64,000 nt of DNA, from assembly GCF_963676685.1 (NCBI RefSeq), contig NC_092344.1, forward strand, positions 6,076,001-6,140,000, given 5' to 3'. Below the pieces are notes generated by a model that did not search any database, was not told the origin of the DNA, and was given only the letters and a program-made list of their open reading frames with translations. Every line of letters begins with the position of its first letter. Positions within the stretch are counted from its first letter, which is position 1. The position numbers and the translations under genes were made by a program. Below are positions 6,926 to 62,850 of this stretch, one piece after another. This DNA is from Mytilus edulis. Taxonomy: Eukaryota.

Positions 6926-9900
6926 AGTACCATTACATGTATTTTGTACAGTTATGCATTGTTACAGTCCAATCATTATTTAAACTATTGTGCCTCAATT
7001 CAGTCTGCTATTTTTTTATTGAAATATTTAAGTCATTTTACAATTCCTTTTTCTTATTTTCTTTCTAATTTACTTGTTAGTTCATTGTCCTCGTCTACTC
7101 ATATTAGCGCGTTGACAAACGTCATATGATAGAACGTATTGTTTTCTGTGCGTCTGACAAAAACAAATCAAATCGAATATGTTGCTTGTTACGATGTCAA
7201 TTAACTAGCTATCTCCAATGTTAGGTAATTACGTAATAGTTCAATGACATCAATGATATACACATAAAACTACTTGATAAACTGCAACCGATTTCACAAT
7301 TAATCGAGTCATTAGGTGGAATGCATTTTCTACAGGCTGACTTAAAAACTGCCTATCACAGACAATTAATGCCTTCTAACAAAGGCGGCTTTACCAGGAG
7401 GAAGTAGGGGACAGATACCCTAACCCCCTTGTGGAGCTTCATGTAAGATACATGCATAGACTTTCTATAAGAATAGCTTTGAATGATGGCTTGCTAGGGT
7501 CACCTTTTTAAACTCCTGCATTGATCTGCACATAACAAAACTTAGAACCAATACAAGCCCTTTTTGTATAAACATTTTTAAGGGATAACCGAAAAGAGTA
7601 AAGATTACAATATGCTTAGATGCTATTATATTTTACTACTGTGTTATCAGCGTATATATAGCTTTTGTATTACCATATACTTATATAAATGGAATGTTAA
7701 TACGATTTTCTTCCTTACATACAGTTAGTATAAGCAGCTCAGTTGGCTTGCACCTATGTTGTCTAATCTTATCTTCAAATCAACAGGTTTTTGTTGTGTA
7801 AAAATGGAATATAACGGAGATTTTCTATACCAAGAACTGTTTTATAAAACTTACATAAATTTTAAAAGGAAATATACGAAATGTACACATTTTGCTTGAA
7901 TCGCACGAATCGTTACTATTCTACCCTCTCCCCTTTCCCAGACAAACAAAAAAACCAAACTGTTTGTTGGAGATTTCATACAATTTGTTTTATTTCGGCG
8001 ATGAACAATAGATGCCGACCTGGTGCTTTCTTTTTTCGTACTTATGTAATTTGATTGTCCCCTCGGTTTCTTATCATAATAGCCTTTTTTACCGCCTCCT
8101 GGGTCTCCCACTCATTCTAGTCTACGTTGGCTTTCAATATTGCTTTCCTGTAGACACGTGGCCAATTTTTAGCATTGTGCTTTGATGCTAATCTATTTGA
8201 TGTAATATTGTCTGAAAGAGGGAATGCACCGAAGAAACTGACTTGCTTTTTCTGTCGGCTGCTACCTTGCACTTAAACACATTATTTACTATTTATAATG
8301 TTACTGAAATAATTCGTTTGAAGCTGTTTTTGTCATCAAACTGTAATTCCTTTGAATTTCCTGATGAAGCATGCATAACCTATTTAACACTCCTCCTCAC
8401 TATTGTAAGGTCCCATAGAGTTCAGCTTGTTTGTTCATGAATTGTTATTCATATGTATCTTATATAGATTGTGTTTATCAGTAGGTAACTGGACTTCATG
8501 CAGAGTCAATTTAATGGTTTATTTCAGAAACCCAAGGTAATCAATCATTGACTTAAATAGTCTGTTATTAAAGGATAATACACTCCTCCCAGACACAGAT
8601 AAGCCGCATAAAGTCTTTTTATCTCTATATTTCTATACAAGTACTAAATGCGTTATAAGGCAAAACATCCGGTACAAGTTACTTTTATCTCTTTTGCAAC
8701 AAACCGTTTAGAACTAGATATGAACCAAGGGACCTTTTACCTTAGGATATACTTACACAAAATTATGAACTACAAAAGTCGGTCTTAGCAATTGTATATA
8801 GTTCAACAACAATGAAGATGAATAATTGCCGACTTTTCCGCTAAATAGAAAATACTTTCATTTATGAAACTTGGGCTTCCTTGGAACTCTTGTTGAGCGT
8901 GGTCAGTTAAATGTGCAGGATATAAACAAAGGACGCATCTCTAGTCTCATTAGGGACATCATATGTCCTGTGTTACAGCAGCTCTTGAAGGGGATCCGCA
9001 GGCGACCCTTGTGGAGTCCATTTTTCATATCCGCTTACTAGTGGAAGTTCAAACTCGTTTTCCACCACCGTACGTGCATCCTAGTCGGTCGACTTTCGTT
9101 ACGCTTCCTGTAATTGATTAACTGTTATAAGTACTAGTCATTCGTCATTTATTGGCAATTTCGTCGTTTAACTACCAGACGGATGATAAAACAGACCGAA
9201 AAAAGAGAAAAAAAACTTTCAGTATATCAAAGAGAGGAAAATTGTATACATTACGGATAACAACAATATCAGAGGAAAAGTTGCTTTCCATGGCAACACA
9301 TTTTACCATTTAATAAAAAAAGGTCTTGGACAATTACTAATTGCATATCTAAAGTGCAAATGGATTACAAAATACATTGCGTGGGGCATCACTGGTGTCT
9401 TTTTGTAATTTTTATTATTTAGCGTCGGTGTGTTATATAGATAATATCTTAACCTTTAATTGGTTTCCTCCAATTGACATTTATTTGCAGTCTAGTTTAT
9501 ATTCCTTAAAACACATGTCGGGGTAGATGATATTCAATTGATGTTCTTGCCATTTTTGACATTTCAAAACCCGAAGATTATAAAGTTCAAGTTCTCTTGC
9601 TATTTATTTCAAGCTATAGATTACATTTTTCTCAATATAAAGTGATTTGATATTTTTATTCGATTTATGAAAATCCTGGCTTATATATTTTAAACTTTTA
9701 CGCATAAAACTATGTCAACCTACTATATATATACGTATCCTTTATCGATACTCTTTGTCAGCGATTTACAAACATTTTTTTCAATCATGTTATGCAGGAT
9801 CAATATAAAAACAACACGAATTGTGATAACATTCTAATCAATCTTTTTATCATAAAAGTATGTTGACTGTACATTTTTAGATGACAAGTCTGAATATAGT

Positions 9901-11395: not shown

Positions 11396-12650
11396 TGTCC
11401 ATATCATCCAAACTGGTTCCCGATCGCAATGTTCAGTATGTTACACATATACCAATATAATAACGTAGTACCGGGAACCAGGATACATATCATCAAACTT
11501 ATAAAAGAAAGTTAGATTGTCTGAGGCAAATACAAACTGTCATAATTCATATGACAAATTCAGAGTAAAATACAGAAACGAAAACTTGGAGAACAAAATG
11601 TATCGACACAATTCTTGAACAATTTCAGTTCATTCATTAGCCCGACTACTAATATGTATCCCATGTGAGCGTATTTAATAAATCAACAAAACTGAAGTAG
11701 TGTACATAACCGATTTATTTACTTACATAACAACGCACCATATCACCTCGTACGATATTACCAATTATATTTAAAGTCACGAAGATCTGACGTCACAGAA
11801 TAGAATACGTAAACAGTAAATGTCGGCAAATAACTATTTGACAGTTCTTAGCGATTTTATAATAATTGGAATTATTTTCATTTTACAGCATTCCCCCGCG
11901 AGAGCATGAGCATGTGTTCTAAAGTCTACGGCATTGTGATGGCTTCTAATTATCTGTCACGAAAAAGGAGTAATTATAAGAGAAACAATACTTATTTAAT
12001 GGTCTTTTTCTTAATATCAACAAGGTTTTAAAATGTTTTGCAAAGAAAATCTGTTTCGCAATATCAAATCAGCGTTCTAATGCTATTTTTATTCACCAAA
12101 CAAGGGCCACAGAAGGGCATATAGAAAATAGACAATATCATTATAAACAATAACATATGCAATGCAATCTAGTTAATTGATATTTAGAAATAAAACACAC
12201 CAAAATAACAACAACATATTATATTTCAATGCATATGATGTTGACTCAAGAGCACAAAGTAAGTGTATTTTGATTATTAAAATAAACAGAAGACTCAAGT
12301 AGTGTGTGCCTTATAGAGATATATCTATAAAAGATATCTATTAAAATGAATTCAAGATTCATTTGAAACATATCTACACAACAAAAGGCATTTATTAGAG
12401 CCAATGTGCTCTTCAAAAGCGACCGACATATGCAAGTGCATCGGTACTATGTTAGACCTTGTATCAACAATGTTTTAAACCATGTAGTTATTGATATCAC
12501 GGATAGAGCAATCGATATGTTTGATAGCGTAATTAAAAGATGGCCTTGAAGAATCTCAATGCATTTTTTAATTACGTAATGATGACTGTAAACGGCGTTT
12601 GCGACAACAACTAATGGTGTAATCTTCGGATTTCAAATGTTTGGCTTTGA

Positions 12651-12692
12651 GCGTTCCTGATGAAGGTAAATCCAGAAAAGCGCTTCGGACGC
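12651..12692 (+). ncRNA. Type I hammerhead ribozyme (family D, 5' copy); predicted cleavage after C12686
   Basis: GCGTTC-CTGATGA-AGGTAAATCCA-GAAA-AGCGCT-TC-GGACGC; GCGUUC pairs with GGACGC (one G-U). Confidence 0.85.
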
Positions 12693-13005
12693 AATAAATT
12701 ATAAAACGTTTTGTTTTTCATTTTTTACATAACTGGGTCGATACCTCTGCTGGTGGACTATCAGTCCCCGAGGGTATCATCAGCTCAGTAGTCAGTGCTT
12801 CGGTACTGACATGATTTAACAAACTTTACTAAAATTGTCTGGTTCTAAATTTTGAAATTATTATATATGAAACTAAGGTTTCAACTCCCTCAGGCAAAGT
12901 TGGCTCTAGATGAATTTGGCTATTTATTTTAGGTATTTTTGACATAAAGCTCTTCAACGATTTTCGGTACTTATACATCTTCGGATTTCAAATGTTTGGC
13001 TTTGA

Positions 13006-13047
13006 GCGTTCCTGATGAAGGTAAATCCAGAAAAGCGCTTCGGACGC
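13006..13047 (+). ncRNA. Type I hammerhead ribozyme (family D, 3' copy); predicted cleavage after C13041
   Basis: Identical to 12651-12692, 355 nt downstream. Confidence 0.85.
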
Positions 13048-14061
13048 AATAAATTATAAAACGTGTTGTTTTCCATTTTTTACTACTGTACCAAACAAAA
13101 TAACAATTTATGAAATTACATATCTGTTTACAAGAACACAAATGGTATGGTACTAACATCGGAGACCCTTATAGAAGTATTCCTCATATAGTTGAGTTGT
13201 TTCTCTCGATTTTGGTTTGTAACCCGGATTTGATTCAGAAAAATCGATATATGACTATTTAACAGGGGTAATATACTACTGTTGCCTTTTACTATATATA
13301 ATTTTAAAATTTAATAAATTTTGGTAAACAATGACATTGCATCTTTCTGTACAGGTTGCTAGCAAACATAAATGATTTGTGTAGATCTTTGGACGCATTT
13401 AAATTAAAGTTTATACCAACAAGAAGTTATATTTTATAAATAGACCATATACCTTCTTTGTGATTAAAAATCCCTTACTACTGTTGCCAGTGATCTGTAT
13501 TCCAATATACACTGACTATGGTTTGATCAATGTATACTGTCAAAGGATCTCACACAAAGGATAATTTTGTGTTTCGTTAAGTTGATGTATATAATATTTT
13601 TGACCAGTTTATATCATTTACACTAAAGTGTGAATGACCAAGAGGTTATCAAGGAAGAATCAATACTAGAGCCGATAACCACTGGCTATCAAACTCGGTT
13701 AACAGCAAGCCACTGACTTTATATTTCCTACTGATCTTTATTTCGATATTTTCCTCTATCAATCTTGCTTTTATTCAGTTGCAGAATTAAATTTCAGTAG
13801 GAAAGAATAAACATCATCGCTAAATGTTTTAATATCGAAAATTTGTTGATCGTTACGTTTATTCAATCTATCCAATTCATACTATCCCTATCATGATTAT
13901 TCTCATTGATATTGCGACTTCTGTATTCATAAGCAGGAATACATACACATGTTTGTGTTACCTCCTTTACGATATAACTTTCCACGTCCATGTTTGACCA
14001 GTTTTCTTTATATAGCATGCACTTTCTCTTTGTGATTGGATATATCATATTATGCTATATA

Positions 14062-14240
14062 GTACCAGGATTGTAATTTAGTACGCCAGACACTCGTTTC
14101 GTCTACATAAGACTCATCAGTGACGCTCATATCAAAATATTTATAAAGCCAAACAAGTAAAAAGTTGAAGAGCATTGAGGATAAAAAATTCCAAAAAGTT
14201 GTGCCAAATACGGCTAAGGTAATCTATGCCTGGGATAAAG
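14062..14240 (-). mobile_element. Retrozyme family C fragment with hammerhead at 14083-14126 (stem III palindrome mutated)
   Basis: Near-identical to 62557-62735; core CTGATGA, GAAA and GTC retained. Confidence 0.82.
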
Positions 14241-15439: not shown

Positions 15440-15830
15440 CTTATCTGGATTCATCTGGATTTACATTCACCAGGAATGCTCAAACCCAAACCCAAATATT
15501 TTAAAGCCAGAGATGTGTATAAATAAGAATAGTAACATTCGTAGCTTTATGACTAAAATGGCCCTAAAATAATAACCAAATTCATGAAAGGTCAACCTCG
15601 CCTCTTATTAACATGGAATTTTAGATTTAGATGAATGTATTATGATTTATGTCAGTACCAAAGCACTGAACAGTGAGCTGATGATACTTGCGGGGGACTA
15701 ACAGTCCAACCAAGTGCTAACAAATGAAAATAATTAATAAAATATAACACCTTATAAATTTCGTGCATTCGAACCACTTTTCTGCATTCACCTTCACACG
15801 GAAAGCTTAAAGCTAAATATTTGACAGACA
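15440..15830 (-). mobile_element. Old, decayed family D retrozyme monomer with two dead hammerheads
   Basis: Ribozyme remnants near 15470 and 15797; internal match to the 12773-12815 segment at 15648-15690. Confidence 0.65.
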
Positions 15831-20760: not shown

Positions 20761-21399
20761 ATGCTTTAATAAACTGAAGAAAAAATTTCATTTATTCACA
20801 ACTAGGCCTTAAAAAGTTATGAAAAGATAGCGAAGACGTAAGTTCATAGGAATAATAGGGATTGTGGTATACCCGACTTTGAGAAAGCGAACCAACGATA
20901 CTAAATAAATATACTGGCGTTAATGATTTAAATTTAAAAAAAAAATGAAAACAAACCGTTATAAGTTTCATGCCTCCGAAAGTTTTTTTTCTGGATTTAC
21001 CTTCACCAAGGTAACCAAGGATGTATAAGAAACGAAACATATCAAGATCTAATTGACCAAATGAGGACTTATATTAATTTCCTATTCAACTCAAGTTCAA
21101 CTTTGAGGGAGTTTAAACGTATCTTTGGTTATACTAAATTGATAAACTCATAAACAGATAATAAAAAACCCGATTGTTTTAAATCATGTCTGTAATGAGG
21201 AACTTTTCATTAGCAATTGTATCACCAAAACTTACATTTCGGTTTGTTATGTCTAAATACGTATAGGGATACATTTATTTTTTCAGGATTTGATTTGTCA
21301 TAAACAATTTCCCCCCTTTTTTTAATTTTTCATCAAATAACAGGATGGCTAGAGTTCCAGGAAAAAAATCACTATAATGGATTTGATTGGTTTTCAAAA

Positions 21400-23460: not shown

Positions 23461-26400
23461 AAATAAATAACAACAGAATGCAAAAATTTAGATTCAATAT
23501 ATCACGTATCAATTATTTGTGGCGAATTAAAATCTGTACATGTAGCACAATATGTTAACATTTAAACTTTTGTTCCTGTATAACCTTAAGGGTTAAACCG
23601 TTTTTCAGTTTTTTCGTGTATTGCATAATATCACCGGTACCGCATGCAGACTTAAGGAATGAATGTTTGTCTAGTTTCATATTGTGTGCATGGTGTGTAT
23701 ATAACATGAACATCCAGTATATGAATAAATCATAATTTCCTTTTTTCTGTTTTTAAAGAACATAAAAGCAAATGATATATCATTCGTTGAACTTGTGTAG
23801 ATATGTTTAACATATCATTCAAAATTTACATGTTAAAATAGTTCTAGTTTGTGTTTAACCCTTGTCGAAAGGTTAATGTAAACATGCATATGAATATCTT
23901 TAATTCTGGTAACCTTCCACACATTAGGTCTATAAGAAAATTACATGTCTGTCTTTATATTTTAGCATTTTTTAATTATTTTTTTTTCATCTCTAAATTC
24001 GATTTTTGATGAGACTATAAATAAAGAAATGATAGTTTTCAGTTTATTAGAAATATTGATATGATTTAAAAAATCAGAATTATAGTGGAATTTTTATGTA
24101 GTTAGCCAAATCATTATATTTTTTTTAAATCATGTATAATGTACCACCTCTGGGACCTGTCTCTTCTCCTTGAAATAGGATTAACATATCCTTTGTAAGG
24201 CAAACGTAGTTAATGACTGTGAAATGGACTGTATAACAAGGTCATACAGTAGATCATTTCATTCACTAAAACCATACAATGGTCATATCATTATGAAATC
24301 ACAGTTCAGTTCAGTGGTTGGTTCTTGTTGGAGTTTAAAGCTAATAGTATTTTACCACTGCAATGAAGTACTGATCGGTAAAGTACATGTTATTTATTGT
24401 GGTATTTCACAGCTGAACTCATTTGTATTACTTAGATAAGATACAATTATAAAGATTATAACTTTAAACTATTTTTTGCCTTTAAAGCAATTTATAAGCA
24501 TTTAGTAAGCGTAGATTGCTGTATGTTAATACCAACTAGTTCGTGATTAGATTACCTGTAAATTGTAAATTGTTATTTTTGATAATATATGGCTTTTTAA
24601 CATTTAGCTGCCAGAATTTCAAATTTCTTTGGACACTAAAATACATTTCTTTTTCAGTGCCTTAAGGCTTCGTGGGTGTTTAAAATTAATCTATTCGTGA
24701 CAGAATAAAAATCACTCATAACGAGCACTGCAATGCGGATACTTCAGTCGTATTTTTCATTGCACATAGGATTAAAAACAATTCCTTTTGTTAATCGTAA
24801 CTTCATATCTTTTTCTAGTATATACGCCTCCGAAAGCAAATACCAAACACTGAGAGTACCTGGTTTTGCCGTAGTAGCTTTCGTATCACACACTGATCAG
24901 TACTTACCTCAAGTATTTCATGATTTATCATTTACAATCAAAAGAAAATGTTGTGTATGGTTAATGTTGATTATGTTTTCTTTGGTCGATTTCTGCTTTT
25001 TTCGCGAAACTCCTTGTAGGTCTTTGGTCATAACAGAAACATTCATTGCAGAAGTCAAAAACCATATGCGTGTTTTGATGGTTTAGACACGCTGATCTAG
25101 ACATTAACATGACTAAATATGTATTGCAATACAGTTATGATCCTAAATTATGTCGATGCTGATAGTTTGGCATGGTACAAGGTCATGTTTTTTCGTCCTG
25201 TTTATGACTTATCCGTTTACTGGTCGATATTTTACATTGGGAAAAAAAGGTTGATATTTATGAGTTGAAATTGACCTTGATCTATTCTTTGGTCGGTAGT
25301 TTGTGACTTTTGTATTTTTGTTAGATATTTGTGTGCTTATTTCGGATCTCTCAAGCCTTTTGATATTTTATTTATTATTTTTGGGTCGTTTTTTGTTTGT
25401 TGCTGTTCTGTTTTATCACTGTCGCTGGTTAAGTTACAAACAACTAAATACTTCATATAAATAATATAAATTTAGTGAAAAAATTAACAAAATTTCAATC
25501 CTGGTATCTAAGATGAGTTAACAAATAACGCTCGAAGCATTATTCTGTATGCAGCTTAACTTTGAACGCAAAATACAAAATCTTTTGAAACCCAGCGATG
25601 AACTATTAAAGTTCATTAAAAGAAAGACCACAATCCCTCTAAACTAAGTCAGCTTTGGCTCAGTTTGTTGAAACCTAAGTTTGTAAAGAGTTTATCGGTT
25701 TATAAATGGGAAAAGGAAGACATGTTTGGTATGAATTATGTTAGTTGCGAAGCACTGACTACTGGGCTAATGATACATACCTTCGGGACTATTGTCCACC
25801 AACAACTAACTTAGTGCTTTAAAATTAAAAAAAAAAACACTTTAAAGATTTTGTGCGTTTAAAGGCATTTTCTGGGTCTACCTTCATCGAGAGCAGTAAA
25901 ACCCAAATATTTTGAAATCAAGATATGTATAAAAGCCTGAGGAGAAAGATGAATAAAAAGGAAATAAAAGAATACAGCCTAAACCATTTAAGGTTGACTT
26001 TACCTTTACTTTATTGCATCAGATGAGCATCTGACTACTAATGTCTCTTTAGTGATAAAGATAGAAAAACATACGGTTGATAAGAGTTGATTTAAACGAA
26101 AAGAAAAAAATGTAGCCAAACCTGGACAGTCAGTGCTTTGTAGGATGGAGATTGGTACTTCAATTCGAATGTTAAAAAATAGCAAATTAAAAAAGTATAT
26201 CTCTATATTACCCTATCAGTACTGATGTACTGATTTATCTAATGGTAGACAAGGTTAGTAACAATCTACCATCATAGATAGAGATATCATAACTAGTAAT
26301 AGTTGTTCTGTATTTCACAATTGATGTATTTTCAGTGATGCTCGAGGCGAAATCTTTTTCGAAACCTTAACGTAAAAATACAAAATTTATTTTTAAAGAA

Positions 26401-26561: not shown

Positions 26562-26758
26562 TTTAGGCATAGATTACCTTAGCTGTATTTGACATAACTT
26601 TTAGGAATTTTGGTCCTTAATGCTTTTCAACTTCGTACTTTATTTGGCCTTTTTAATTTTTTTTGGATTCGAGCGTCACTGATGAGTCTTTTTTAGACGA
26701 AACTCGCGTCTGTCGTATATACAAAATTTAGTCCTGGTATCTATGATGAGTTTATTTA
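26562..26758 (+). mobile_element. Retrozyme family C fragment with near-intact hammerhead at 26673-26716
   Basis: GCGTCA-CTGATGA-GTCT ttttt AGAC-GAAA-CTCGCG-TC-TGTCGT; flanks align with the 62545 copy. Confidence 0.8.
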
Positions 26759-40237: not shown

Positions 40238-40339
40238 AAACGTCTCGGTAAATAGCTTACACATAATAACAGTGAATAATCTACAGAAAATGTAGTCACT
40301 ACATAGTTATATATATCGTTGATGAGAATTTGGAAAGAT

Positions 40340-40485
40340 CTTTTCGTATGTTTTATCCTCAATCCTCTTCAACTTTGTTCTTTATTTTTCCTCTTATCTC
40401 TTTTTATTCGAGCGTCACTGCAGTCTTTTTTTTTAAGAAAAAGAATCGCGCGTCTGGCGTACGCAATGATAAGACTGTTATCTTT
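40340..40485 (+). mobile_element. Retrozyme family C fragment, ribozyme decayed
   Basis: cgagcgtcactg...cgcgcgtctggcgtac retained; core disrupted. Confidence 0.6.
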
Positions 40486-51626: not shown

Positions 51627-52349
51627 GATTACAGAACTAGGAAATAACTGTATGAACCTGATGAAGTGAAATTACAGAACTAGGAAGTAATTGTATGAAC
51701 ATGATGAAATGAAATTACAGAACTAAGAAATAACTGTATGAACCTGATGAAGTGAATTACAGAACTAGAAAATAACTGTATGAACCTGATGAAGTGAATT
51801 ACAGAACTAGGAAGTAACTGTATGAACCTGATGAAGTGAATTACAGAACTAGGAAGTAATTGTATGAACCCGATGAAGTGAATTACAGAACTAGGAAATA
51901 ACTGTATGAACCTGATGAAGTGAATTACAGAACTAGGAAGTAATTGTATGAACCTGATGAAGTGAATTACAGAACTAGGAAATAACTGTATGAACCTGAT
52001 AAAGTGAATTACAGAACTAGGAAGTAATTGTATGAACCTGATGAAGTGAATTACAGAACTAGGAAATAACTGTATGAACCTGATGAAGTGAATTACAGAA
52101 CTAGGAAGTAATTGTATGAACCTGATGAAGTGAATTACAGAACTAGGAAATAACTGTATGAACCTGATGAAGTGAATTACAGAACTAGGAAGTAATTGTA
52201 TGAACCTGATGAAGTGAATTACAGAACTAGGAAATAACTGTATGAACCTGATGAAGTGAATTACAGAACTAGGAAATAACTGTATAAACCTGATGAAGTG
52301 AATTACAGAACTAGGAAATAACTGTATGAACATGATGAAGTGAATTACA
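51627..52349. repeat. 42-bp tandem repeat, about 17 copies (GAATTACAGAACTAGGAARTAAYTGTATGAACCTGATGAAGT)
   Basis: Directly visible; accounts for the 217-aa 14-residue-repeat ORF on the minus strand. Confidence 0.97.
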
Positions 52350-52898: not shown

Positions 52899-53494
52899 AT
52901 CATAACGTTATATCATAACGTTCTTATAACGTAACTGGTAGTCCACACTTTTACGTTCCTACAATGTTAAATCACAACGTTCTCACAACGAAACAGAAAC
53001 GTTCCTGGAACATTTCCTGAACGTTTTTGTGTTTTGTGGGTAATTACGCGTTTCTGCGGGTAGATTGTCAGCCTATACGAATGGTTGCAACTTCATGATG
53101 TAAAGTTGATCTGTGTCGATGAAAGTACATGCTTTCTTAATTCTATTTTATCTTTTTAATTGTGTTTTATTAAAAAAAAATTAAATCAAATTCTTAATCT
53201 CGAGCAAAACTCCAGAAACAAGTTTGGTCTGCAAAGAATTATTATGCATTAGGATCTTTAAATGTTTTGAAAAATAAAGTGAACATACCAAAACAAAATG
53301 TGTTGAAAAAGTGTTGAGCTTTATATGGTACGAAGTATGCTTGCTATCTACTATGTACTGAGTAGGTGTGTTACATGCTGTTTAAGTAGTAAGTGTTGTA
53401 TCTGCTGTTTACAAAGTATATGTTGTCAATTGTCGTAGGTGTGTTACATGCTGTGTGCAGAATAGGTGTGTTCTTCAACTTTTTTTAGTTTCGA

Positions 53495-53538
53495 GTGTCA
53501 CTGATGAGTCTTTTGTAGATGAAACGCGCGTCTGGTGT
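53495..53538 (+). ncRNA. Type I hammerhead ribozyme (family C fragment 53470-53560)
   Basis: GTGTCA-CTGATGA-GTCT tttgt AGAT-GAAA-CGCGCG-TC-TGGTGT; core intact, extra G-U pairs. Confidence 0.8.
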
Positions 53539-56500
53539 AAATACAAACTTTAATCCTGAAAATGATTGTATTCACTTGTGTATTATTTTGATCTATCGTA
53601 TGCTATATTCCATGTAGGTTAAAGTAAATCAAAGCTCTTCTGTCCTTGGTAACTTAATATACTTTGTGTAATCCCATTGCGATATTCATTCTTAAACCAT
53701 AACCTTTTCAAAGCTTACATTATGTTACAAGGCATGCTGTGCACAAATTATTCAAAATTATAAAGTAAATACTAACCTGCAAAATTAAAAATAAGTCGCT
53801 ACACTATGTAATTAAACTTGTATAAAAAAAAAATAGCATTTCCGACGTTCAAACTAAATAAGACTAAATCATTAATTCAGCGTTTTGAAAGGCAAGTACC
53901 TTAGTAGGAGATGGGTTAGGCATGTACTAGGCGTGATCAGCAATGAAACGGAAAAGAATAGCAACATTAAAAGTAAAACAAGGATGAATCGTTTCCTTGG
54001 CATACTTTTTAAACAATTACATAAAATCAAAAAGACCTAAAAAAAATCCAATTACACATGTTTGCTATTTACTAAATGCAAATGCATGTTTATATCGGGT
54101 TAAATGGCCGCTGATAGTACTTGGAGGTCATTTCCAAAGTTATTTAAATGGCGTCTAGAATAAAGTACACTCGAAAGGATCACACATATCATCAATTCCA
54201 TGCTTTGTTAATTCAGTGTTTATTTGAGAGACTTTTTTGTAATTTGAATATATGTTTTAGTATGATAAAAATCGAATGTGAGACATTGAGTGAAATCGAT
54301 GAACATTAAAATAAATTTGACAGTTTATACCCATTAAAAAAAGTGTGTTTTTATAATTATAAATTATTTCATCGGCCTATTTTTAAAAATTAACTACAAA
54401 TTGAAATAGAAAATAAATATGGCATACAAAGAAATGATCAACGGGAGCATTTGGAAAGTATTTTTCATAAGTATTTTTTCCATTCGTGATAAACAATAGG
54501 TGAGCAAGTTTTAATCTAAACATCTGTTTTAAATACCTCTCAGATAGAGTTCAAATAACTGTCAAAAGAAACCCGTTTGGCCATTTATGATACAAAGATT
54601 TTAGAATGATTACTAGATAAATTGATTGATTGATCGAATAATTTGTGTTTATCCTAGAGATATTTGTGACAATGTCGGTGAGCACCGTCGACTTTCGAAA
54701 GGAAATGTACAATCCTGCTCAAACAAAATTACCACCATGTTTAAAATCTCATTTATCGATTGATAAGTGCACCTCAATTTTTACGGTAACAAACAGGTAG
54801 TCGCATGAACCTCGCCATTCTTTAGAACGGTTGTATATTTGCATGTATCAGAATTAAGAACTGTATCAGGACCAGATCACTACTTTACTGTAAGCATATC
54901 CTGTATTAAATGCATCATCGTCAAGACGAATCCAGAGAAATAAAACATAATATAATGTTTATAAGATGCAACATGATACAAATATATATGCATGGCCTAG
55001 TTCTTGATATATCATAAGCGTACATTTTGTTAGTTCACTGATTGATTTAAAAAGGCACAAGTCTAAACAAAACTAGGGTCAATTTATAAGTTATGTTAAG
55101 TGTTAGGCTTTTGTCATAGATTTGTTTTTTTCTTCCGAGGAATTAATTATACATTGCAACTCCCTGATGATAGCCTCTGTTATGTTTGTTCATAAATTTG
55201 GTCGATATTTATAACCTTGACATATATTATACAGTGTTATAGAAACTAGTCTTTTTTGAAGACAGTGTTTTGACCATAACAGTTTGCTTTCGACTTGTGA
55301 GTTAGAATATCCTTGTGGTATCTTTCGTGTCTCTTTTGACCATAAGATGTCATTTCTTGTTTTTTCTTTCTTTTTTTTTTCTTTTTTTTTATTGGTTGTT
55401 TATCATATATCGGTTTTTACTTTGACCTCTGAATTTAAGCAACACATTGCTTTACATGTGCTTTCATAGGTTTCACATGTTTTCAGTTATTAGCTTTTGA
55501 TAATGTTTGTTTTTTTACTTTCAGGTCCAAGCCCTATTTCTTGCTCTCAAAACAAAATATTTCAAAGTATGTTAAGATTCAGCTTGCAGCTGATGATGTC
55601 AAACGAGGAAACTTGAAATCAATATAGATTAAGTAATAAGAATATGAACTTCTAACAGTTTGCATTTATTATTACAAATTAACAGTATGATTTCACCTGC
55701 CTATTTGATCAATGAAATATATAATGTACAAAGACATGATCTACGGGAGCAAGTATCTTCAATGATTTTTATCAAACTAGTCTATTATAGAAACAATTGG
55801 TGAGAAATATTTTTTTTAATATAAGTCACGTTATGAACAAATAACTGTCAAAAGAAAAAAGTTTGATCTTTAATTTTATTTAAATTTTGAAAAAAATCTT
55901 TCTTCAAAAGTTTGTAACAAATTAACAAAACGACAAACGGATCTGTTTGTTCTTTCTTTTAAAATAGATCGCAATTGTTCAATACATTTATGCATAAATA
56001 TATAAAACAATAAATGTACAAGTTAACTATATACAGAAGGCAGCTTTTGAAAAATATACCAAAACCGTTTAAAACAATAGAATTATGCATATATATATAA
56101 AGATTACAGGAAAACTATTTACAAAATGGAGTTTTAAAAACATTAAGTAAACCGTTTCAAACAATAACAGTAAGCATAAGGGAGCAAGCATCTAATTTTT
56201 AAGGGAGGGGGTATGAAGTCAGAAAATTTAATATTTTTTCAAAGCTACCAATCAAACTAATTTGGACTCGGATGAGAGGGTTGTCTCATTGGCACTCATA
56301 CCACATCTTCTTACATTTATCGGCTACAATGTCAGTCCTGGTTTATAAAACCTAATTTTTTTTTATAAGATGCAAGTTGGGAATACATAAAGTCAACATT
56401 AATGTCACAAGTCTTAGTTGAAGGCCGTACGGTGACCTATAGTGTTAATGTCTGTGTCATTTTGGTCTTTTGTGGATAGTTGTCTCATTTGGCAATCATA

Positions 56501-57328: not shown

Positions 57329-57495
57329 AATAGTTATCAAAGGTACCAGGCTTATAATTTAATACACCGGAAGCGTGGATCGTCTACATAAGACTCACCA
57401 GTGCACTCATGTCAAATAGGTAACGAAAGCCAAACAAAGATAAAGAGCATTGGTGACCAAAAATTCCCCAAAAGTGTGCCAAATACGGCTACAGT
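57329..57495 (-). mobile_element. Retrozyme family C fragment, ribozyme decayed
   Basis: Aligns with the 62545 copy; core reads CTGGTGA and GATC. Confidence 0.7.
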
Positions 57496-59074
57496 TCTTA
57501 TTTATAATATTGGAATTTTATATTTTTGTAATTTGGGTTTCATGTTTTTATTCTTTTACATGCTTACCATCAGTTGACAAATTACATGGTGTCATTGCAC
57601 TAAACGTTACTTTTTTATCCGAATTTTCAATGAAACAGAAAAGAGTAAAAAAATCATTGGGAATGAACGGGGATTTTTTTTTAACTTTTTGTTTAATTAG
57701 AATATATGTAAGTCAGATAAATTAATGTAATGTGTAAAGCGGAAGTGTCATGTATTAAAAAAGAAAAAAATAGTGTGCATACTTATTTGTACTTCTCAGT
57801 ACCAGTAGGTTGATATTTTTAACGTGTGAAGTATATCTTGGTTTATGATGCGATATTAAGTATTCAGCAGATTAAACTGGATTTTACAGAGTAATAATTT
57901 AAATATAAACACCTATCTCCAAATTCAATCCAAAAAGAGGAAGTCCATAAACACAAAAAAAAAATGTTATCAACCAGCAGAACGATTGAAAAATCACTGT
58001 ATTATTTCTGACTTGGCACAGGTATTTTCTGAAGAAAATGATGGGTTGATCCTGGTGGTAGTTGGCTAAACCTTCCACTTGTATGACAGTATATATAGTT
58101 TAAAGCCAAATCTGGTGACTTTCACAAGGTCGTCCAGACGCACAACGTACCTAGATAAAAATTCAAAAACTCTGAGAGCAACATTGCAAATAATTTATTT
58201 TGTCTTTGTAATAAATCCTGTATATAAAGTAAAGCATTTACTGATGTTTTCATAACTCAACACAATAATGTATGTATCAATGACTATATGCTTCACCCGC
58301 CAATTTTTATTGCTGATTTTTGTCATGTTTTTAAGATGAAAGTGTAGTTTTGATATGGATTTTGAGAAGAATATGTTTAATTTTGCTACATCTTGATATT
58401 TATTTGAAAGGAAGGAAAAGGGAATACGTACAAGCCTACAACTCAATACTTAAATCAATTTTGATTGCGATTGGTTCTTAACAATCATATATGTATGTAT
58501 CTACCAATGCTACTATATGACATTTAGAACATAGAATTATTAAAATGCTTTGACAAATTAAAGTTTATCCAGCGTTACAATGTACTTGAGTTGTCAACAA
58601 TCGCAAACATGGAAAACCGGTAAAAGTACCTGTCAGCCTGTAGGTGCACTGGTAAATGTTCAGTATAGATGAATTAGATAACACTCGAACAACACAGCAA
58701 AAATAAAAGACTAATGGTCAACACTCCGTCTTCAATTATATACGTTGGTTTCTATAAAATATCAACAATCAACCCCTAATTTAGACAATTTATGTAACAT
58801 ATAACAGAGACTATTAAAGAGTTAAAATCAATCTTTGGTTTCTCAGAAGACAAAACCAAATATAAGATATTTTTGAATTGACACCGGTACTTGTTAGATA
58901 TTAAACTTCCGCCTTTTCTCTCAATCAGAAGACTAATAAAAGCGAATACTTGGAAACATGAAAAAACTGTTAAAGCACAAGTAAAGATATTTGCTTCTTA
59001 AATGAAGTATTACATTAAAACTGCACCATCAAGGTCACACTGCAAAAATATGAATTATTCTAAATACTAAGGAA

Positions 59075-59260
59075 TTCCTTATCCCAGTCAGATAACCTTA
59101 GCCGTATTTGGCACACTTTTGGGGAATTTTTGTATCATCAATGTTCTTCATCTTTGTTTGGCTTTCGTTACTTTTTTTACATGAGTGCAATGGTGAGTCT
59201 ATGTAGACGAAACACGCCTCTTGCGTGTTTAATTATAAACCTGGTACCTTTGATAACTAT
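59075..59260 (+). mobile_element. Retrozyme family C fragment, ribozyme decayed; inverted duplicate of 57329-57495
   Basis: Shares private variants with the 57329 copy. Confidence 0.7.
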
Positions 59261-61662
59261 ATCTAAGTTAATAGCAATACAAATTTGTGATATAATTTAC
59301 TTATCGTAAGAGGCAATATATTACGATGTTAGACTATAAATTGTACACAGAATTGCCATAAATTCATCTTTAAATTATGTTGAAACGGACGTTTTAGTGT
59401 TTATTAAGGATTTTCTAGACTACGAACTATTTAGCTTTACTTCAAACCTTTTTAACGGGCTATACACTCTACGACATGGTTTGGTCTGCAGACAGTTTGA
59501 ACTTAGTTTCAAAAGACAATATGTGATCGACTTAGTATCGAAGAAGAAAGCATAATCCTTATTTTATTTATTAAAATAAGATGTGGTATGGCCAAAGCAA
59601 CTCACCACAAGAGACAAAATGACATAAGAGTATATTTGTATACCTATGTTAACATTTACATTGTCTATTGACCAATCTCTAAAGATATCTATACTACGTT
59701 AGTACGTACACAGCATACGACGATTCATTACCTGTTTGATGTGAACCTGGAGTTATCTTCCTTTGTTTACCGTATGGACTGAAGTTGCAATGGTTAAACT
59801 AAAATGTTTAATAATCATCTTTACCATGAAATAGATGATACATATTACACATTGGTTGATAACTTTTGAACACCAGTATACTACTGCCTTTGAACAATCT
59901 CTCATGCTTCTGTCAGTTGAAAACTTTAAAACACATTGGTTTTAAAGTTGCCAAAAATGTTTGGCTTAATGGTCAACCAACAAATATCTTTATCTTTTAA
60001 TTTTAGTTAGATTTCTCTGAATCCGATATTGCTCCCATTAACTTGAGTCCAGCTGTTTTTTAAATGGACAGCCAACAATATTTGTTTTAATTGTTGCCAA
60101 AGCCTTCTTTAAAAAATGTTTTTCAGACATCTGTTATTCAGTTATTGGCCTGGTTTGTTTAAAGTGTCTGATACCTCTAACCAAGTCGGTCATTTTCAAT
60201 AATTACAAATAAACAGTATGATTTCACCTGCTTTATTTGATAGAAACTTATTCACCTCTCTCAAACAAATCCAATTCACGTGTCTTTGATGACATTTTGT
60301 ATAAGACGTGCTAGATATACAATGAGTGTTATTGTCTTAATAAAATCATTAAACGTCTTTATTGATAACGTATAAATAACTGTCATAAATATCAAAATTG
60401 CGATTTTGATTGTTTGCTATTTTGATTGTTTATCAACAAAACGGAAAACAGAAAAAAATGTATGTTTCGTTTGCATACTTGTCAATTTATAGTTCGATAT
60501 AAGTTTAATCTTAGATTTAATCGAATGTGTTAAGATACAATAGTAGATATCAAACGATTAATATTTTTTTGGCAGACAGGGGGCAAAACAATTAGGGATC
60601 GGTACAATACTGTTTATCTATAATCGTTTAAATGCAAATGCTGGGCGTTACCGGTAGTCAAGTGTATACTCAAACTGGATCTTCTCCACAACATTTTACA
60701 AATGATATGATACCGGTATATTGAAGTTCGATTCAAATTAAAGATACGGGAAAATACAATATAATTATGATCATTACTATATATGACAAATAATAACTAC
60801 TCAACAATTAAAAAAGAAAGAGTCAGTCCAAACGAAGAAGGATAACTCCATGTCCACAGCAAATACCAAGAGGGCTTGGTCGATTGACAATGAACATGTT
60901 ACAAAAAATATATACAAATAAACCTCTATTTCATTTTGTCTCCTGTGGAGAGTTGTCTCATCGGCTATCATGCCACAACTTCTTTTGATAAATAAAATAA
61001 GGATGATACCTTCTTCTTCTATAATGATCAAAGTAAAGTGTTTTAATCGAAGTCAATCTCAAATTTTCTTCTGAAACTAAGTGAATTAGCTGTATACAAA
61101 CCAAATCATGTCGTGCAGGGTATACCGGTTAAAAAAAGTTTGCGAGACACATGCTATATTAGTAGTCAAGAAAAACACTAAAACGTCCGTTTTAACATAA
61201 TTAAAAAACGATCCTATTACTGGTTAATACGACATTCTCTAAACAGGCCTACATCGAAAACAAATATATTTCTCTCTGAATGTATTCTTACACATTGTAT
61301 TTTACTACAAACAATACATCCATTTCAGTATGATAGACGCAACATATTTCAATTTGATATACCACTTTTCTTGAATCACTGGTTCATTTTAGTTCCTAGG
61401 ACGTACCACTAGTAGTTCATGCATTTACACCTGCCATGGTTTATAACACATTCGTAATTGAAGACATTTTGCAACTTTTACAAAGAATGTCTTTTCTGTT
61501 AAAACTTACCAGATATGGTGTTGATTTGTGATTAAGACTCTAAATTTAAATATTTCTGTAAAAATGACTTTTAAAGACTAAGTTTACTCGAGATAAGTCC
61601 GCAAACAACCTTACATCTAAAGATGTGCAAACTGGCATTTCGTTGATATATGTAAGGAATAG

Positions 61663-62501
61663 TAGAGGACTTAAACTGGCTCTTGTGAAACTCCAAATAG
61701 AACATCTAAAGGGTAGATAGAGGACTTAAACTGGCTCTTGTGAAACTCCAAATAGAACATCTAAAGGGGTAGATAGAGGACTTAAACTGGCTCTTGTGAA
61801 ACTCCAAATAGAACATCTAAAGGGGTAGATAGAGGACTTAAACTGGCTCTTGTGAAACTCCAAATAGAACATCTAAAGGGGTAGATAGAGGACTTAAACT
61901 GGCTCTTGTGAAACTCCAAATAGAATATCTAAAGGGTAGATAGAGGACTTAAACTGGCTCTTGTGAAACTCTAAATAGAACATCTAAAGGGTAGATATAG
62001 AGGACTTAAACTGGCTCTTGTGAAACTCCAAATAGAACATCTAAAGGGGTAGATAGAGGACTTAAACTGGCTCTTGTGAAACTCCAAATAGAACATCTAA
62101 AGGGGTAGATAGAGGACTTAAACTGGCTCTTGTGAAACTCCAAATAGAACATCTAAAGGGGTAGATAGAGGACTTAAACTGGCTCTTGTGAAACTCCAAA
62201 TAGAACATCTAAAGGGGTAGATAGAGGACTTAAACTGGCTCTTGTGAAACTCCAAATAGAACATCTAAAGGGTAGATAGAGGACTTAAACTGGCTCTTGT
62301 GAAACTCCAAATAGAACATCTAAAGGGGTAGATAGAGGACTTAAACTGGCTCTTGTGAAACTCCAAATAGAACATCTAAAGGGTAGATATAGAGGACTTA
62401 ACCTGGCTCTTGTGAAACTCCAAATAGAACATCTAAAAGGGTAGATAGAGGACTTAAACGGGCTCTTGTGAAACTCTAAATAGAATATCTAAAGGGTAGA
62501 T
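61663..62501. repeat. 55-57-bp tandem repeat, 15 copies (GATAGAGGACTTAAACTGGCTCTTGTGAAACTCCAAATAGAACATCTAAAGGGGTA)
   Basis: Head-to-tail near-identical units, no unique spacers. Confidence 0.97.
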
Positions 62502-62544: not shown

Positions 62545-62850
62545 TAGGTATCAAAGGTACCAGGATTATACTTTAGTACGCCAGACGCGCGTTTCGTCTA
62601 CATAAGACTCATCAGTGACGCTCATATCAAAATATTTATAAAGCCAAACAAGTACAAAGTTGAAGAGCATTGAGGATCCAAAATTCCAAAAAGTTGTGCC
62701 AAATAATGCTAAGTTAATCTATGTCTGGGATAAGAAAATCCTTAGTTTTTCCAAAAATTCAAAGTTTTGTAAACAGGAAATTTATAAAAATGACCACATT
62801 ATTGATATTCATGTCAACACCGAAGTGTTGACTACTGGGCTGGTGATACA
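62545..62850 (-). mobile_element. Hammerhead retrozyme family C, 5'-truncated copy with an intact ribozyme
   Basis: Longest copy of a repeat seen at least 9 times in the window; ribozyme at 62578-62621 and UUCG hairpin at 62813-62832. Confidence 0.85.
62578..62621 (-). ncRNA. Type I hammerhead ribozyme (family C), canonical GUC site
   Basis: Minus strand GCGTCA-CTGATGA-GTCT tatgt AGAC-GAAA-CGCGCG-TC-TGGCGT; all three stems form; stem III palindrome ACGCGCGT. Confidence 0.9.

What the first reader, a model, noticed from the sequence alone, without database searches (positions are those of the whole stretch)
12622..13083. Complete two-ribozyme retrozyme predicted to release a 355-nt circularisable RNA
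Seen: two identical type I hammerhead folds (12651-12692, 13006-13047) exactly 355 nt apart inside terminal direct repeats, with a hairpin-rich non-coding interior. Established: small non-autonomous hammerhead retroelements in metazoans, mussels included, are transcribed as multimers, self-cleave and accumulate as circular RNAs. Inference: read-through transcription here would excise 12687-13041 as a unit, and identical ribozymes suggest a young, possibly active copy. The class is known; this locus is invisible to ORF-based annotation.
Basis: partly seen in the sequence, partly recalled or inferred. Interest (0 to 1): 0.85.

Follow-up and report, generated by a model that had tools for sequence, protein, structure and literature searches.

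The report
Old truncated mussel hammerhead retrozyme copy
This is one ordinary and rather old copy of a published, very abundant mussel repeat that carries self-cutting hammerhead RNA motifs; the motif in this sub-family is unusual enough that standard ribozyme searches miss it.

Summary
Two identical hammerhead cores (12657-12686, 13012-13041) lie 355 nt apart inside 107-nt repeated ends that are 98% alike.

The element is 1.3 head-to-tail units of a ~351-nt non-coding repeat. It is homologous over its whole length to the published Mytilus retrozyme Mg353 (Cervera & de la Pena 2020). This genome holds 2,881 copies of this hammerhead and 28,463 of the Mg353 type.

Nearly all of about 48 insertions examined end at one fixed 3' site (...CCATTTTTT[A], here 13081-13083). 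They begin at arbitrary points in the unit. The "terminal repeats" are therefore tandem overlap in a 5'-truncated retro-insertion, not LTR-like ends.

Many arrays consist of identical units (21, 8 and 4), against 2.35% divergence between arrays. That fits more-than-unit reverse transcription of one monomer template.

The hammerhead is atypical: A.A at 10.1/11.1 and a 2-bp helix II. Rfam gives no hit. Helices I and III show compensatory changes across three sub-families.

The copy is not young. It has six private substitutions and a 4-nt insertion, and it is the most divergent of the 40 copies compared. No RNA read carries its alleles and its flanks are silent.

The scan had already noted hammerhead arrays on two other pieces of this genome. 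Verdict: a known class, with a probably undescribed sub-family.

The parts
12622..13083 (+). Whole insertion: 1.3 head-to-tail units (462 bp) of the retrozyme sub-family, 36% G+C, non-coding
12622..12728 (+). First copy of the 107-nt overlap (5'-truncated upstream unit); carries two derived changes at 12710 and 12718
12977..13083 (+). Second copy of the 107-nt overlap; runs to the family's fixed 3' terminus
12651..12692 (+). Hammerhead 1 (type I). Helix I 12651-12656 / 12687-12692; CUGAUGA 12657-12663; helix II A-GG-UAAAU-CC-A 12664-12674; GAAA 12675-12678; helix III palindrome 12678-12685; predicted cleavage after C12686
13006..13047 (+). Hammerhead 2, identical to hammerhead 1; predicted cleavage after C13041
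12687..13041 (+). Unit that the two ribozymes would release (355 nt; most other copies 351-352 nt)
12729..12815 (+). Best-conserved block shared by three sub-families, including the UUCG-capped hairpin 12791-12810; forms the stable part of the predicted fold
13073..13083 (+). Fixed 3' terminus of the family (CCATTTTTTAC; T-run 13076-13081). Insertions end here, with 1-4 nt of ambiguity (microhomology)
   Evidence: (loose ends at 13080-13082)
12862..12865 (+). Private 4-nt insertion (approximate place, inside a TA-rich run). It makes this unit 355 nt instead of 351
   Evidence: (table 4)

Best explanation
Window 12622-13083 is one dispersed insertion of a mussel non-LTR hammerhead retrozyme. 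It is a non-coding, non-autonomous retroelement homologous to the published Mytilus galloprovincialis Mg353 family, and it belongs to a sub-family with about 2,900 hammerhead copies in this genome.

Shown: it consists of 1.3 head-to-tail units. Its 3' end lies at the family's fixed terminus, about 40 nt (13081-13083) past the hammerhead cleavage site (after C13041). Its 5' end lies at an arbitrary point in the unit. The copy is comparatively old and is not detectably transcribed in the runs examined.

Inferred life cycle of the family: multimeric transcripts fold two neighbouring hammerheads into a double hammerhead through the 8-nt palindromic helix III. They cut after C17 and release unit-length RNA with 5'-OH and 2',3'-cyclic phosphate ends. 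A host tRNA-type ligase circularises this RNA. A reverse transcriptase supplied in trans, most likely from a Penelope-like element, starts at the U-run site on a nicked target and copies the circle for more than one turn. It stops at random, which gives arrays of identical units with a fixed 3' end and a variable 5' end.

If this locus were read through it would yield the 355-nt unit 12687-13041. There is no evidence that this happens.
For: Homology: the unit aligns end to end with Mg353-type units taken from this genome, with the hammerhead at the same place (A1, A2). The Mg353 construct is printed in the supplement of PMC7229834.

Abundance: there are 2,881 window-type cores and 28,463 Mg353-type cores, on all large contigs.

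Insertion anatomy: 40 of 40 insertions end at phase 105-113, with 5' phases scattered from 1 to 347 and 1.27 to 22 units. Truncated copies seen mostly end at the same phase 104-108. Mg353-type copies end at the homologous site. RNA reads break into unrelated sequence at 13080-13082. There is no target duplication of 9 bp or more, only a small excess of short junction matches: 5.26 against 4.78 +/- 0.16.

Template: within-array divergence has median 0, with 21, 8 and 4 identical units, against 2.35% between arrays.

Ribozyme: all core nucleotides are present. Compensatory pairs between sub-families are 2.1-1.1 C-G vs A-U; 2.4-1.4 G-C vs A-U; 15.2-16.2 A-U / C-G / U-A. Helix III is always an 8-nt palindrome. 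The predicted dimer forms the 8-bp intermolecular helix III. The hammerhead fold is no less stable than that of the Mg353-type motif, whose published clone self-cleaves: -2.0 against +0.8 kcal/mol. The core is better kept than its surroundings in diverged copies: 41/42 against 87% in L082b, and 2,881 against 1,271 hits for the adjoining 30-mer.

Literature: mussel retrozyme circRNAs and self-cleavage (PMC7229834); dimeric type I hammerheads and more-than-unit copying of circles (PMC4209133); retrozymes as PLE derivatives (10.64898/2026.07.22.740005); PLE 5' truncation and head-to-tail non-autonomous insertions (PMC8557442).
Against: Rfam finds no hammerhead here even at E<=10, although it scores the Mg353-type motif at 28.9-33.8 bits. 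Position 10.1/11.1 is A.A instead of G-C, and helix II has only two G-C pairs, so catalysis is unproven.

The RNA reads show no pile-up of ends at 12686/12687 or 13041/13042. Between 40% and 61% of them continue into unrelated sequence, so much of the signal is passive co-transcription of other copies. The only circle-like evidence is one 381-nt contig (351 + 30) from a fish-gut metatranscriptome, which a tandem array would also give.

Identical units could also arise by recent unequal crossing-over, or be inherited from a homogeneous source array.

The Penelope-like partner was not tested.
Confidence: 0.85

Rival explanations
1. One reading: a complete, young and possibly active two-ribozyme retrozyme locus that is transcribed and sheds a 355-nt circular RNA.
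For: Both hammerhead cores are intact and identical. The geometry allows release of 12687-13041. The family as a whole is expressed as abundant circRNA in mussels (PMC7229834).
Against: The copy has six private substitutions plus a 4-nt insertion, and it is the most divergent of the 40 sampled. Its two ends already differ. Read depth is zero in both flanks, and 0 of 128 reads at 12906, 0 of 46 at 12731 and 0 of 23 at 12842/12845 carry the window's letters. No promoter is known. Most copies in the sample carry the same core, so identity of the two cores says nothing about age.
Confidence: 0.08
2. The sub-family's hammerhead is catalytically dead. The repeat spreads as a SINE-like parasite of a Penelope-like reverse transcriptase, copied from linear read-through multimers. 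The motif is only a relic, or a recognition element for the reverse transcriptase.
For: There is no Rfam hit even at E<=10. Position 10.1/11.1 is A.A and helix II has 2 bp. No read ends pile up at the predicted site, and many reads are chimeric with host sequence. Hammerheads of Penelope-like elements cleave poorly in vitro (PMC4209133).
Against: Compensatory changes keep helices I and III and the helix III palindrome across three sub-families. The core is better conserved than its flanks in diverged copies. [quoted passage not shown] Arrays of up to 21 identical units with no 3' transduction in 40 of 40 loci are easier to explain from a unit-length circle.
Confidence: 0.25
3. An ordinary satellite or minisatellite that grew by replication slippage and unequal crossing-over, with no retrotransposition.
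For: The head-to-tail structure. Within-array homogeneity could reflect concerted evolution.
Against: There are thousands of dispersed loci on all chromosomes. Every insertion in the main sample has the same 3' boundary and a random 5' boundary, including copies shorter than one unit. One array sits inside loop 2 of another retrozyme's hammerhead, with at most 2 bp duplicated (L039).
Confidence: 0.03

Closest known systems
Mytilus galloprovincialis non-LTR retrozymes (clone Mg353; HHR A and HHR B), Cervera & de la Pena, NAR 2020 (PMC7229834)
   Same: Same host group. The unit is about 350 nt, A+T-rich, non-coding and tandem. A type I hammerhead with a 2-bp helix III and GCGC loop sits at the same place. 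The whole unit aligns, with a strongly conserved block at 12729-12815. Both types share the homologous fixed 3' terminus.
   Different: Identity is only about 61-75% of alignment columns. Helix II is remodelled: A-GG/CC-A with a 5-nt loop instead of GUC(U)/(A)GAC with a 7-nt loop. The 2.1-1.1 and 15.2-16.2 pairs are swapped. This type is about ten times less abundant (2,881 against 28,463). It is missed by Rfam, whereas the Mg353 type scores 29-34 bits. The motif string was not found in the paper's supplement or in the paper library.
Newt satellite 2 and axolotl retrozymes (dimeric type I hammerheads)
   Same: Tandem repeats of about 330 bp. The short helix III makes two neighbouring motifs act as a double hammerhead (PMC6155905; PMC7229834). 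Here the 8-nt palindrome AAGCGCUU pairs between two copies in the predicted dimer.
   Different: No sequence relationship was tested. Those are vertebrate families with canonical helix II.
Penelope-like elements and their non-autonomous derivatives (PMC4209133, PMC8557442, preprint 10.64898/2026.07.22.740005)
   Same: [quoted passage not shown] All of these are seen here.
   Different: There is no ORF. Sharing of the 3' end with an autonomous element in this genome was not tested. The preprint examined vertebrates and did not test invertebrate retrozymes.
Plant LTR retrozymes (type III hammerheads, Cervera et al. 2016, PMC4918200)
   Same: Non-autonomous elements with two ribozymes that release a circularisable RNA.
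   Different: Plant elements have true LTRs of about 350 bp, a PBS and PPT, 4-bp target duplications, high G+C and type III ribozymes (PMC7229834). None of these applies here.

Membership tests
Metazoan non-LTR retrozyme (Cervera & de la Pena 2020) | Head-to-tail repeats of about 150-450 bp, from dimers to long multimers, dispersed in the genome | tested here: met
   355-nt spacing here. Period is 351-352 nt in arrays of 1.3 to 22 units on all large contigs.
Metazoan non-LTR retrozyme (Cervera & de la Pena 2020) | A type I hammerhead in every unit | tested here: met
   Core C3-A9, G12-A14, A15.1-U16.1 and C17, with an open helix I. Helix II is non-canonical.
Metazoan non-LTR retrozyme (Cervera & de la Pena 2020) | Low G+C (<45-50%), no ORF, no LTR/PBS/PPT | tested here: met
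   36% G+C. No ORF of 90 aa or more nearby. The repeated ends are tandem overlap. PBS and PPT were not searched for formally.
Metazoan non-LTR retrozyme (Cervera & de la Pena 2020) | Sequence homology to the cloned mussel retrozyme | tested here: met
   Alignments A1 and A2 with Mg353-type units of this genome. The Mg353 sequence was read in the supplement.
Metazoan non-LTR retrozyme (Cervera & de la Pena 2020) | Accumulates as unit-length circular RNA | tested here: inconclusive
   Family-level RNA reads exist, but many are chimeric with host sequence and none piles up at the cleavage site. One 351+30-nt cyclic contig fits either a circle or a tandem array.
Metazoan non-LTR retrozyme (Cervera & de la Pena 2020) | Self-cleavage at the predicted site | not testable with these tools
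   Needs in vitro transcription and mapping of the cleavage site.
Hammerhead ribozyme type I (Rfam RF00163) | Score at or above the family's gathering score | tested here: not met
   No hit at gathering scores or at E<=10. Control: the Mg353-type motif scores 28.9 and 33.8 bits against a cut-off of 34.
Hammerhead ribozyme type I (Rfam RF00163) | Helix II closed by a 10.1-11.1 Watson-Crick pair (usually G-C) and at least 3 bp | tested here: not met
   A.A at 10.1/11.1, two G-C pairs, then U.U. The two sister sub-families have G-C plus 3 more pairs.
Hammerhead ribozyme type I (Rfam RF00163) | Helices I and III supported by compensatory change | tested here: met
   Pair 2.1-1.1 is C-G or A-U; 2.4-1.4 is G-C or A-U; 15.2-16.2 is A-U, C-G or U-A. 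These come from only three lineages, so the statistics are weak.
Non-autonomous derivative of a Penelope-like element | Fixed 3' end, variable 5' truncation, partial or multicopy tandems | tested here: met
Non-autonomous derivative of a Penelope-like element | 3' terminal sequence shared with an autonomous RT/GIY-YIG element of the same genome | not tested
   The genome has 858 GIY-YIG candidates, but no more genome DNA could be cut out. No such ORF occurs in the sequences held.

The most novel reading that the evidence does not exclude
The sub-family's hammerhead (A.A at 10.1/11.1, 2-bp helix II, 8-nt palindromic helix III) is a naturally active variant that works as a double hammerhead. Rfam and, presumably, descriptor-based searches miss it, so censuses of animal hammerheads would be undercounts. 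On this reading, the arrays of identical units with a fixed 3' start and a random 5' stop are direct genomic footprints of rolling-circle reverse transcription of its circular RNA by a Penelope-like enzyme.
Probability: 0.45. Interest if true: 0.45.

Novelty: new member of a known kind. Interest (0 to 1): 0.25.

Why it matters
The locus itself matters little. It is one of thousands of copies of a repeat class described in mussels in 2020.

Two side results could interest specialists. First, a roughly 2,900-copy sub-family keeps a hammerhead whose helix II breaks the usual rules and escapes the standard model. If it is active, the tolerated sequence space of natural hammerheads is wider than thought and present counts are too low. 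Second, the insertion anatomy gives sequence-level support, in an invertebrate, for the proposed more-than-unit (rolling-circle) reverse transcription of retrozyme circles and for their dependence on Penelope-like elements. That anatomy is one fixed 3' start about 40 nt past the cleavage site, random 5' ends, arrays born as identical units, and almost no target duplication. The 2026 preprint left this idea untested outside vertebrates.

Tried and rejected
- Rfam at gathering scores and at E<=10 gave no ribozyme here.
- ARAGORN found no tRNA-like gene in 12500-13200.
- A hammerhead on the minus strand was rejected. A CUGAUGA reads on the minus strand at 12777-12783, but no GAAA follows a helix II.
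- Target duplications of 9 bp or more: none. The two apparent cases, L031 and L055, are insertions into local tandem repeats.
- A k-mer copy-number profile along the unit was meant to look for a step of 5' ends at the cleavage site. It was abandoned after one count because sub-lineages differ in the tail, which confounds the counts. Among about 48 insertions only one (L052, phase 67) starts at the cleavage site, so there is no enrichment.
ORFs in the held sequences gave only a B-box zinc finger.
- The 30-mer scan found nothing in viral contigs. It found two marine metagenome contigs, one of which holds a truncated copy ending at the same 3' terminus.
- The motif string was not found in the supplement of PMC7229834 or in the paper library.
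Full report
**Observation.** A 107-nt segment (12622-12728) recurs at 12977-13083 with 98% identity and a spacing of 355 nt. The only differences are at 12710/13065 and 12718/13073. The 30-nt string from CUGAUGA to the predicted cleavage C occurs exactly twice in the 64-kb window, at 12657-12686 and 13012-13041. None is expected by chance.

Read as a type I hammerhead, each motif has these parts:
- helix I GCGUUC/GGACGC;
- the CUGAUGA box;
- a helix II segment A-GG-UAAAU-CC-A;
- GAAA;
- a 2-bp helix III (A-U, A-U) capped by GCGC, which together form the 8-nt palindrome AAGCGCUU;
- C17 at 12686 or 13041.

Cleavage at both sites would release 12687-13041, 355 nt. The interior has no ORF. It folds only moderately better than shuffled sequence (z = -1.75). 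Its stable part is 12729-12815.

**What the standard test says.** Rfam finds no ribozyme in the window at gathering scores. It finds none in 12300-13400 even at E<=10. As a control, the same search on a locus of this genome that carries the published mussel motif gives Hammerhead_1 (RF00163) at 33.8 and 28.9 bits. That is just under the cut-off of 34. The model can therefore see mussel type I hammerheads with a short helix III, and the motif here is much further from the consensus.

**What it is.** Cervera and de la Pena (NAR 2020, PMC7229834) described about 5,000 type I hammerheads in the draft M. galloprovincialis genome. These sit within 350-390-bp tandem repeats, self-cleave in vitro at about 0.1 per min, and accumulate as circular RNA, up to 1 (unit lost in the held text, presumably per cent) of total RNA, in gonad and mantle. 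Their supplement prints a cloned genomic copy, Mg353.

The 32-nt Mg353 hammerhead occurs 28,463 times, allowing up to 2 mismatches, in the window's 1.37-Gb genome. This identifies the host as a Mytilus-type mussel. Units carrying it align with the window's unit over the whole length, with the hammerhead at the same position and a strongly conserved block at 12729-12815 (A1, A2). The window's own hammerhead core occurs 2,881 times. A third, intermediate sub-family turned up in locus L082.

The element is thus a member of the known mussel retrozyme family. It belongs to a sub-family that I could not find in that paper's supplement or in the paper library. The two published variants, HHR A and HHR B, are said to differ only in loops 1 and 2 and in the upper helix I. 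That matches the two loop-2 variants I see within the Mg353 type. It does not match the window type.

**Anatomy of insertions.** I cut out 39 further loci and mapped each on the unit. All 40 insertions, the window's included, end at the same place...GTGTTGTTTTCCATTTTTT, followed by one to a few ambiguous letters. This corresponds to 13081-13083. Their 5' ends fall anywhere in the unit (phases 1 to 347), and they hold 1.27 to 22 units.

Other evidence agrees:
- Copies with a single hammerhead are simply shorter. They measure 124 to 615 bp, and most end at the same terminus.
- One of the two marine metagenome contigs that carry the core holds a truncated copy ending at that terminus.
- Mg353-type insertions end at the homologous position.
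- In the RNA runs, reads break away into unrelated sequences at 13080-13082. These are the 3' junctions of other copies.

There is no target duplication of 9 bp or more, only a small excess of short matches at the junctions (5.26 against 4.78 +/- 0.16). One array lies inside loop 2 of an Mg353-type hammerhead. There the interrupted sequence can be read across the insertion, with at most 2 bp duplicated (L039).

A fixed 3' end with random 5' truncation and head-to-tail multicopy insertions is the signature described for Penelope-like elements and their non-autonomous derivatives (PMC8557442).

**How arrays arise.** Within arrays the median divergence between units is 0. There are 21 identical units in L037, 8 in L032 and 4 in L036. 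Units from different arrays differ by 2.35% on average. Each array therefore looks as if it was copied from one monomer.

This fits the idea that a unit-length circle is reverse-transcribed for more than one turn. That idea was proposed for Penelope-like elements in 2014 (PMC4209133), and the 2026 preprint calls it likely for retrozymes (10.64898/2026.07.22.740005). It fits less well the preprint's alternative of local amplification after insertion. It remains an inference. Very recent unequal crossing-over, or copying of a homogeneous source array, would give the same picture.

**Is the ribozyme real?**

For:
- Every invariant core nucleotide is present.
- Compared with the two sister sub-families, helix I and helix III carry compensatory changes. 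Pair 2.1-1.1 is C-G against A-U, pair 2.4-1.4 is G-C against A-U, and pair 15.2-16.2 is A-U, C-G or U-A.
- Helix III is an 8-nt palindrome in all three.
- The predicted homodimer uses that palindrome as an 8-bp intermolecular helix. This is the double-hammerhead arrangement known for newt, viroid and Penelope-like-element motifs (PMC6155905; PMC4209133).
- The nearest-neighbour energy of the hammerhead fold (-2.0 kcal/mol) is no worse than that of the Mg353-type motif (+0.8 kcal/mol), whose published clone self-cleaves.
- Diverged copies keep the core better than the rest: 41/42 against 87% in L082b, and 2,881 hits against 1,271 for the adjoining 30-mer.

Against:
- Position 10.1/11.1 is A.A rather than G-C.
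- Helix II has only two G-C pairs.
- Rfam gives nothing.
- The reads show no pile-up of ends at the predicted site.

I put catalytic competence, probably as a dimer, at about 0.6.

**This particular copy.** Against all 39 other arrays it has six private substitutions (12710, 12718, 12731, 12842, 12845, 12906) and a 4-nt insertion near 12862. The insertion makes the unit 355 instead of 351 nt. It is the most divergent copy of the sample, at 4.3% against 2.7%. None of these changes touches the hammerheads.

In three raw-read RNA runs, depth is zero in both flanks. No read carries the window's letters at 12731 (0 of 46), 12842/12845 (0 of 23) or 12906 (0 of 128). Between 40% and 61% of the reads run on into unrelated sequence. 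Coverage is highest over the last 200 nt before the terminus, as expected if most signal comes from truncated copies carried inside host transcripts.

Caveat: the raw-read runs are labelled organism A, while the best DNA holder of the stretch is organism B. The individual, and perhaps the species, therefore differs from the assembly. The libraries may also be poly(A)-selected.

A 381-nt contig from a fish-gut metatranscriptome closes on itself (351 + 30 letters). That fits a circle or a tandem array equally well.

**Comparison and verdict.** The class, its occurrence in mussels, its circular RNA and its likely link to Penelope-like elements are all published. The locus is an ordinary and rather old member. 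The window alone holds at least ten more retrozyme fragments. The scan has noted hammerhead arrays on two other pieces of this genome.

What seems new is modest. One point is a roughly 2,900-copy sub-family whose hammerhead has a non-canonical helix II and escapes Rfam. The other is the boundary and array-identity analysis, which supports more-than-unit reverse transcription from a fixed start site.

Noticed in passing
L039 (G000:C10:42141200-42143600), junctions at about 675 and 1764: A 3.1-unit array of the window's sub-family sits inside loop 2 of an Mg353-type hammerhead. The interrupted motif can be read across the insertion with at most 2 bp duplicated, which gives a rare view of the target site. 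L074/L075 show another Mg353-type hammerhead broken at the same loop.
   Followed up: partly
window 14059-14232(-), 15454-15824(-), 20940-21008(-), 25724-25932(-), 26565-26758(+), 40328-40461(+), 53474-53558(+), 57336-57505(-), 59045-59265(+), 62550-62849(-): At least ten further retrozyme fragments of both sub-families lie in the same 64 kb. Several carry Mg353-type hammerheads that Rfam leaves just under its cut-off, and two end at the Mg353-type fixed 3' phase.
   Followed up: partly
window 12729-12815: This block is better conserved between the three sub-families than the hammerhead itself. It holds the UUCG hairpin with a compensatory U-A/C-G change, and it forms the stable core of the predicted fold. 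It contains strings that recall tRNA-gene A and B boxes (from memory), but in the wrong order, and ARAGORN finds no tRNA. Its role is unknown; candidates are reverse transcriptase or ligase recognition, or a promoter.
   Followed up: partly
L082 (G000:C1:10268000-10272500) 93-136 and 444-487: A third retrozyme sub-family, roughly 75-88% identical to the window type depending on the measure. Its hammerhead has A at position 7, a canonical 4-bp helix II (GACA/UGUC) and helix III palindrome AUGCGCAU.
   Followed up: partly
run X6 (fish gut metatranscriptome), contig of 381 nt laid on 12719-13073: The contig closes on itself (351-nt unit plus 30 letters of overlap). Mussel retrozyme sequence therefore turns up in a fish-gut RNA library as a cyclic or tandem assembly.
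   Followed up: no
L077 (G000:C1:3945500-3954500) 1250-1470 and 7679-7899: The same 221-bp truncated copy occurs twice, 6.4 kb apart, with identical boundaries. This is probably a segmental duplication that carried the insertion along.
   Followed up: no
window 51628-52349 and 61663-62501: Two unrelated tandem arrays: 42 bp x 17 units and 56 bp x 15 units. The 42-bp unit contains a CTGATGA string, but no hammerhead can be drawn around it.
   Followed up: no
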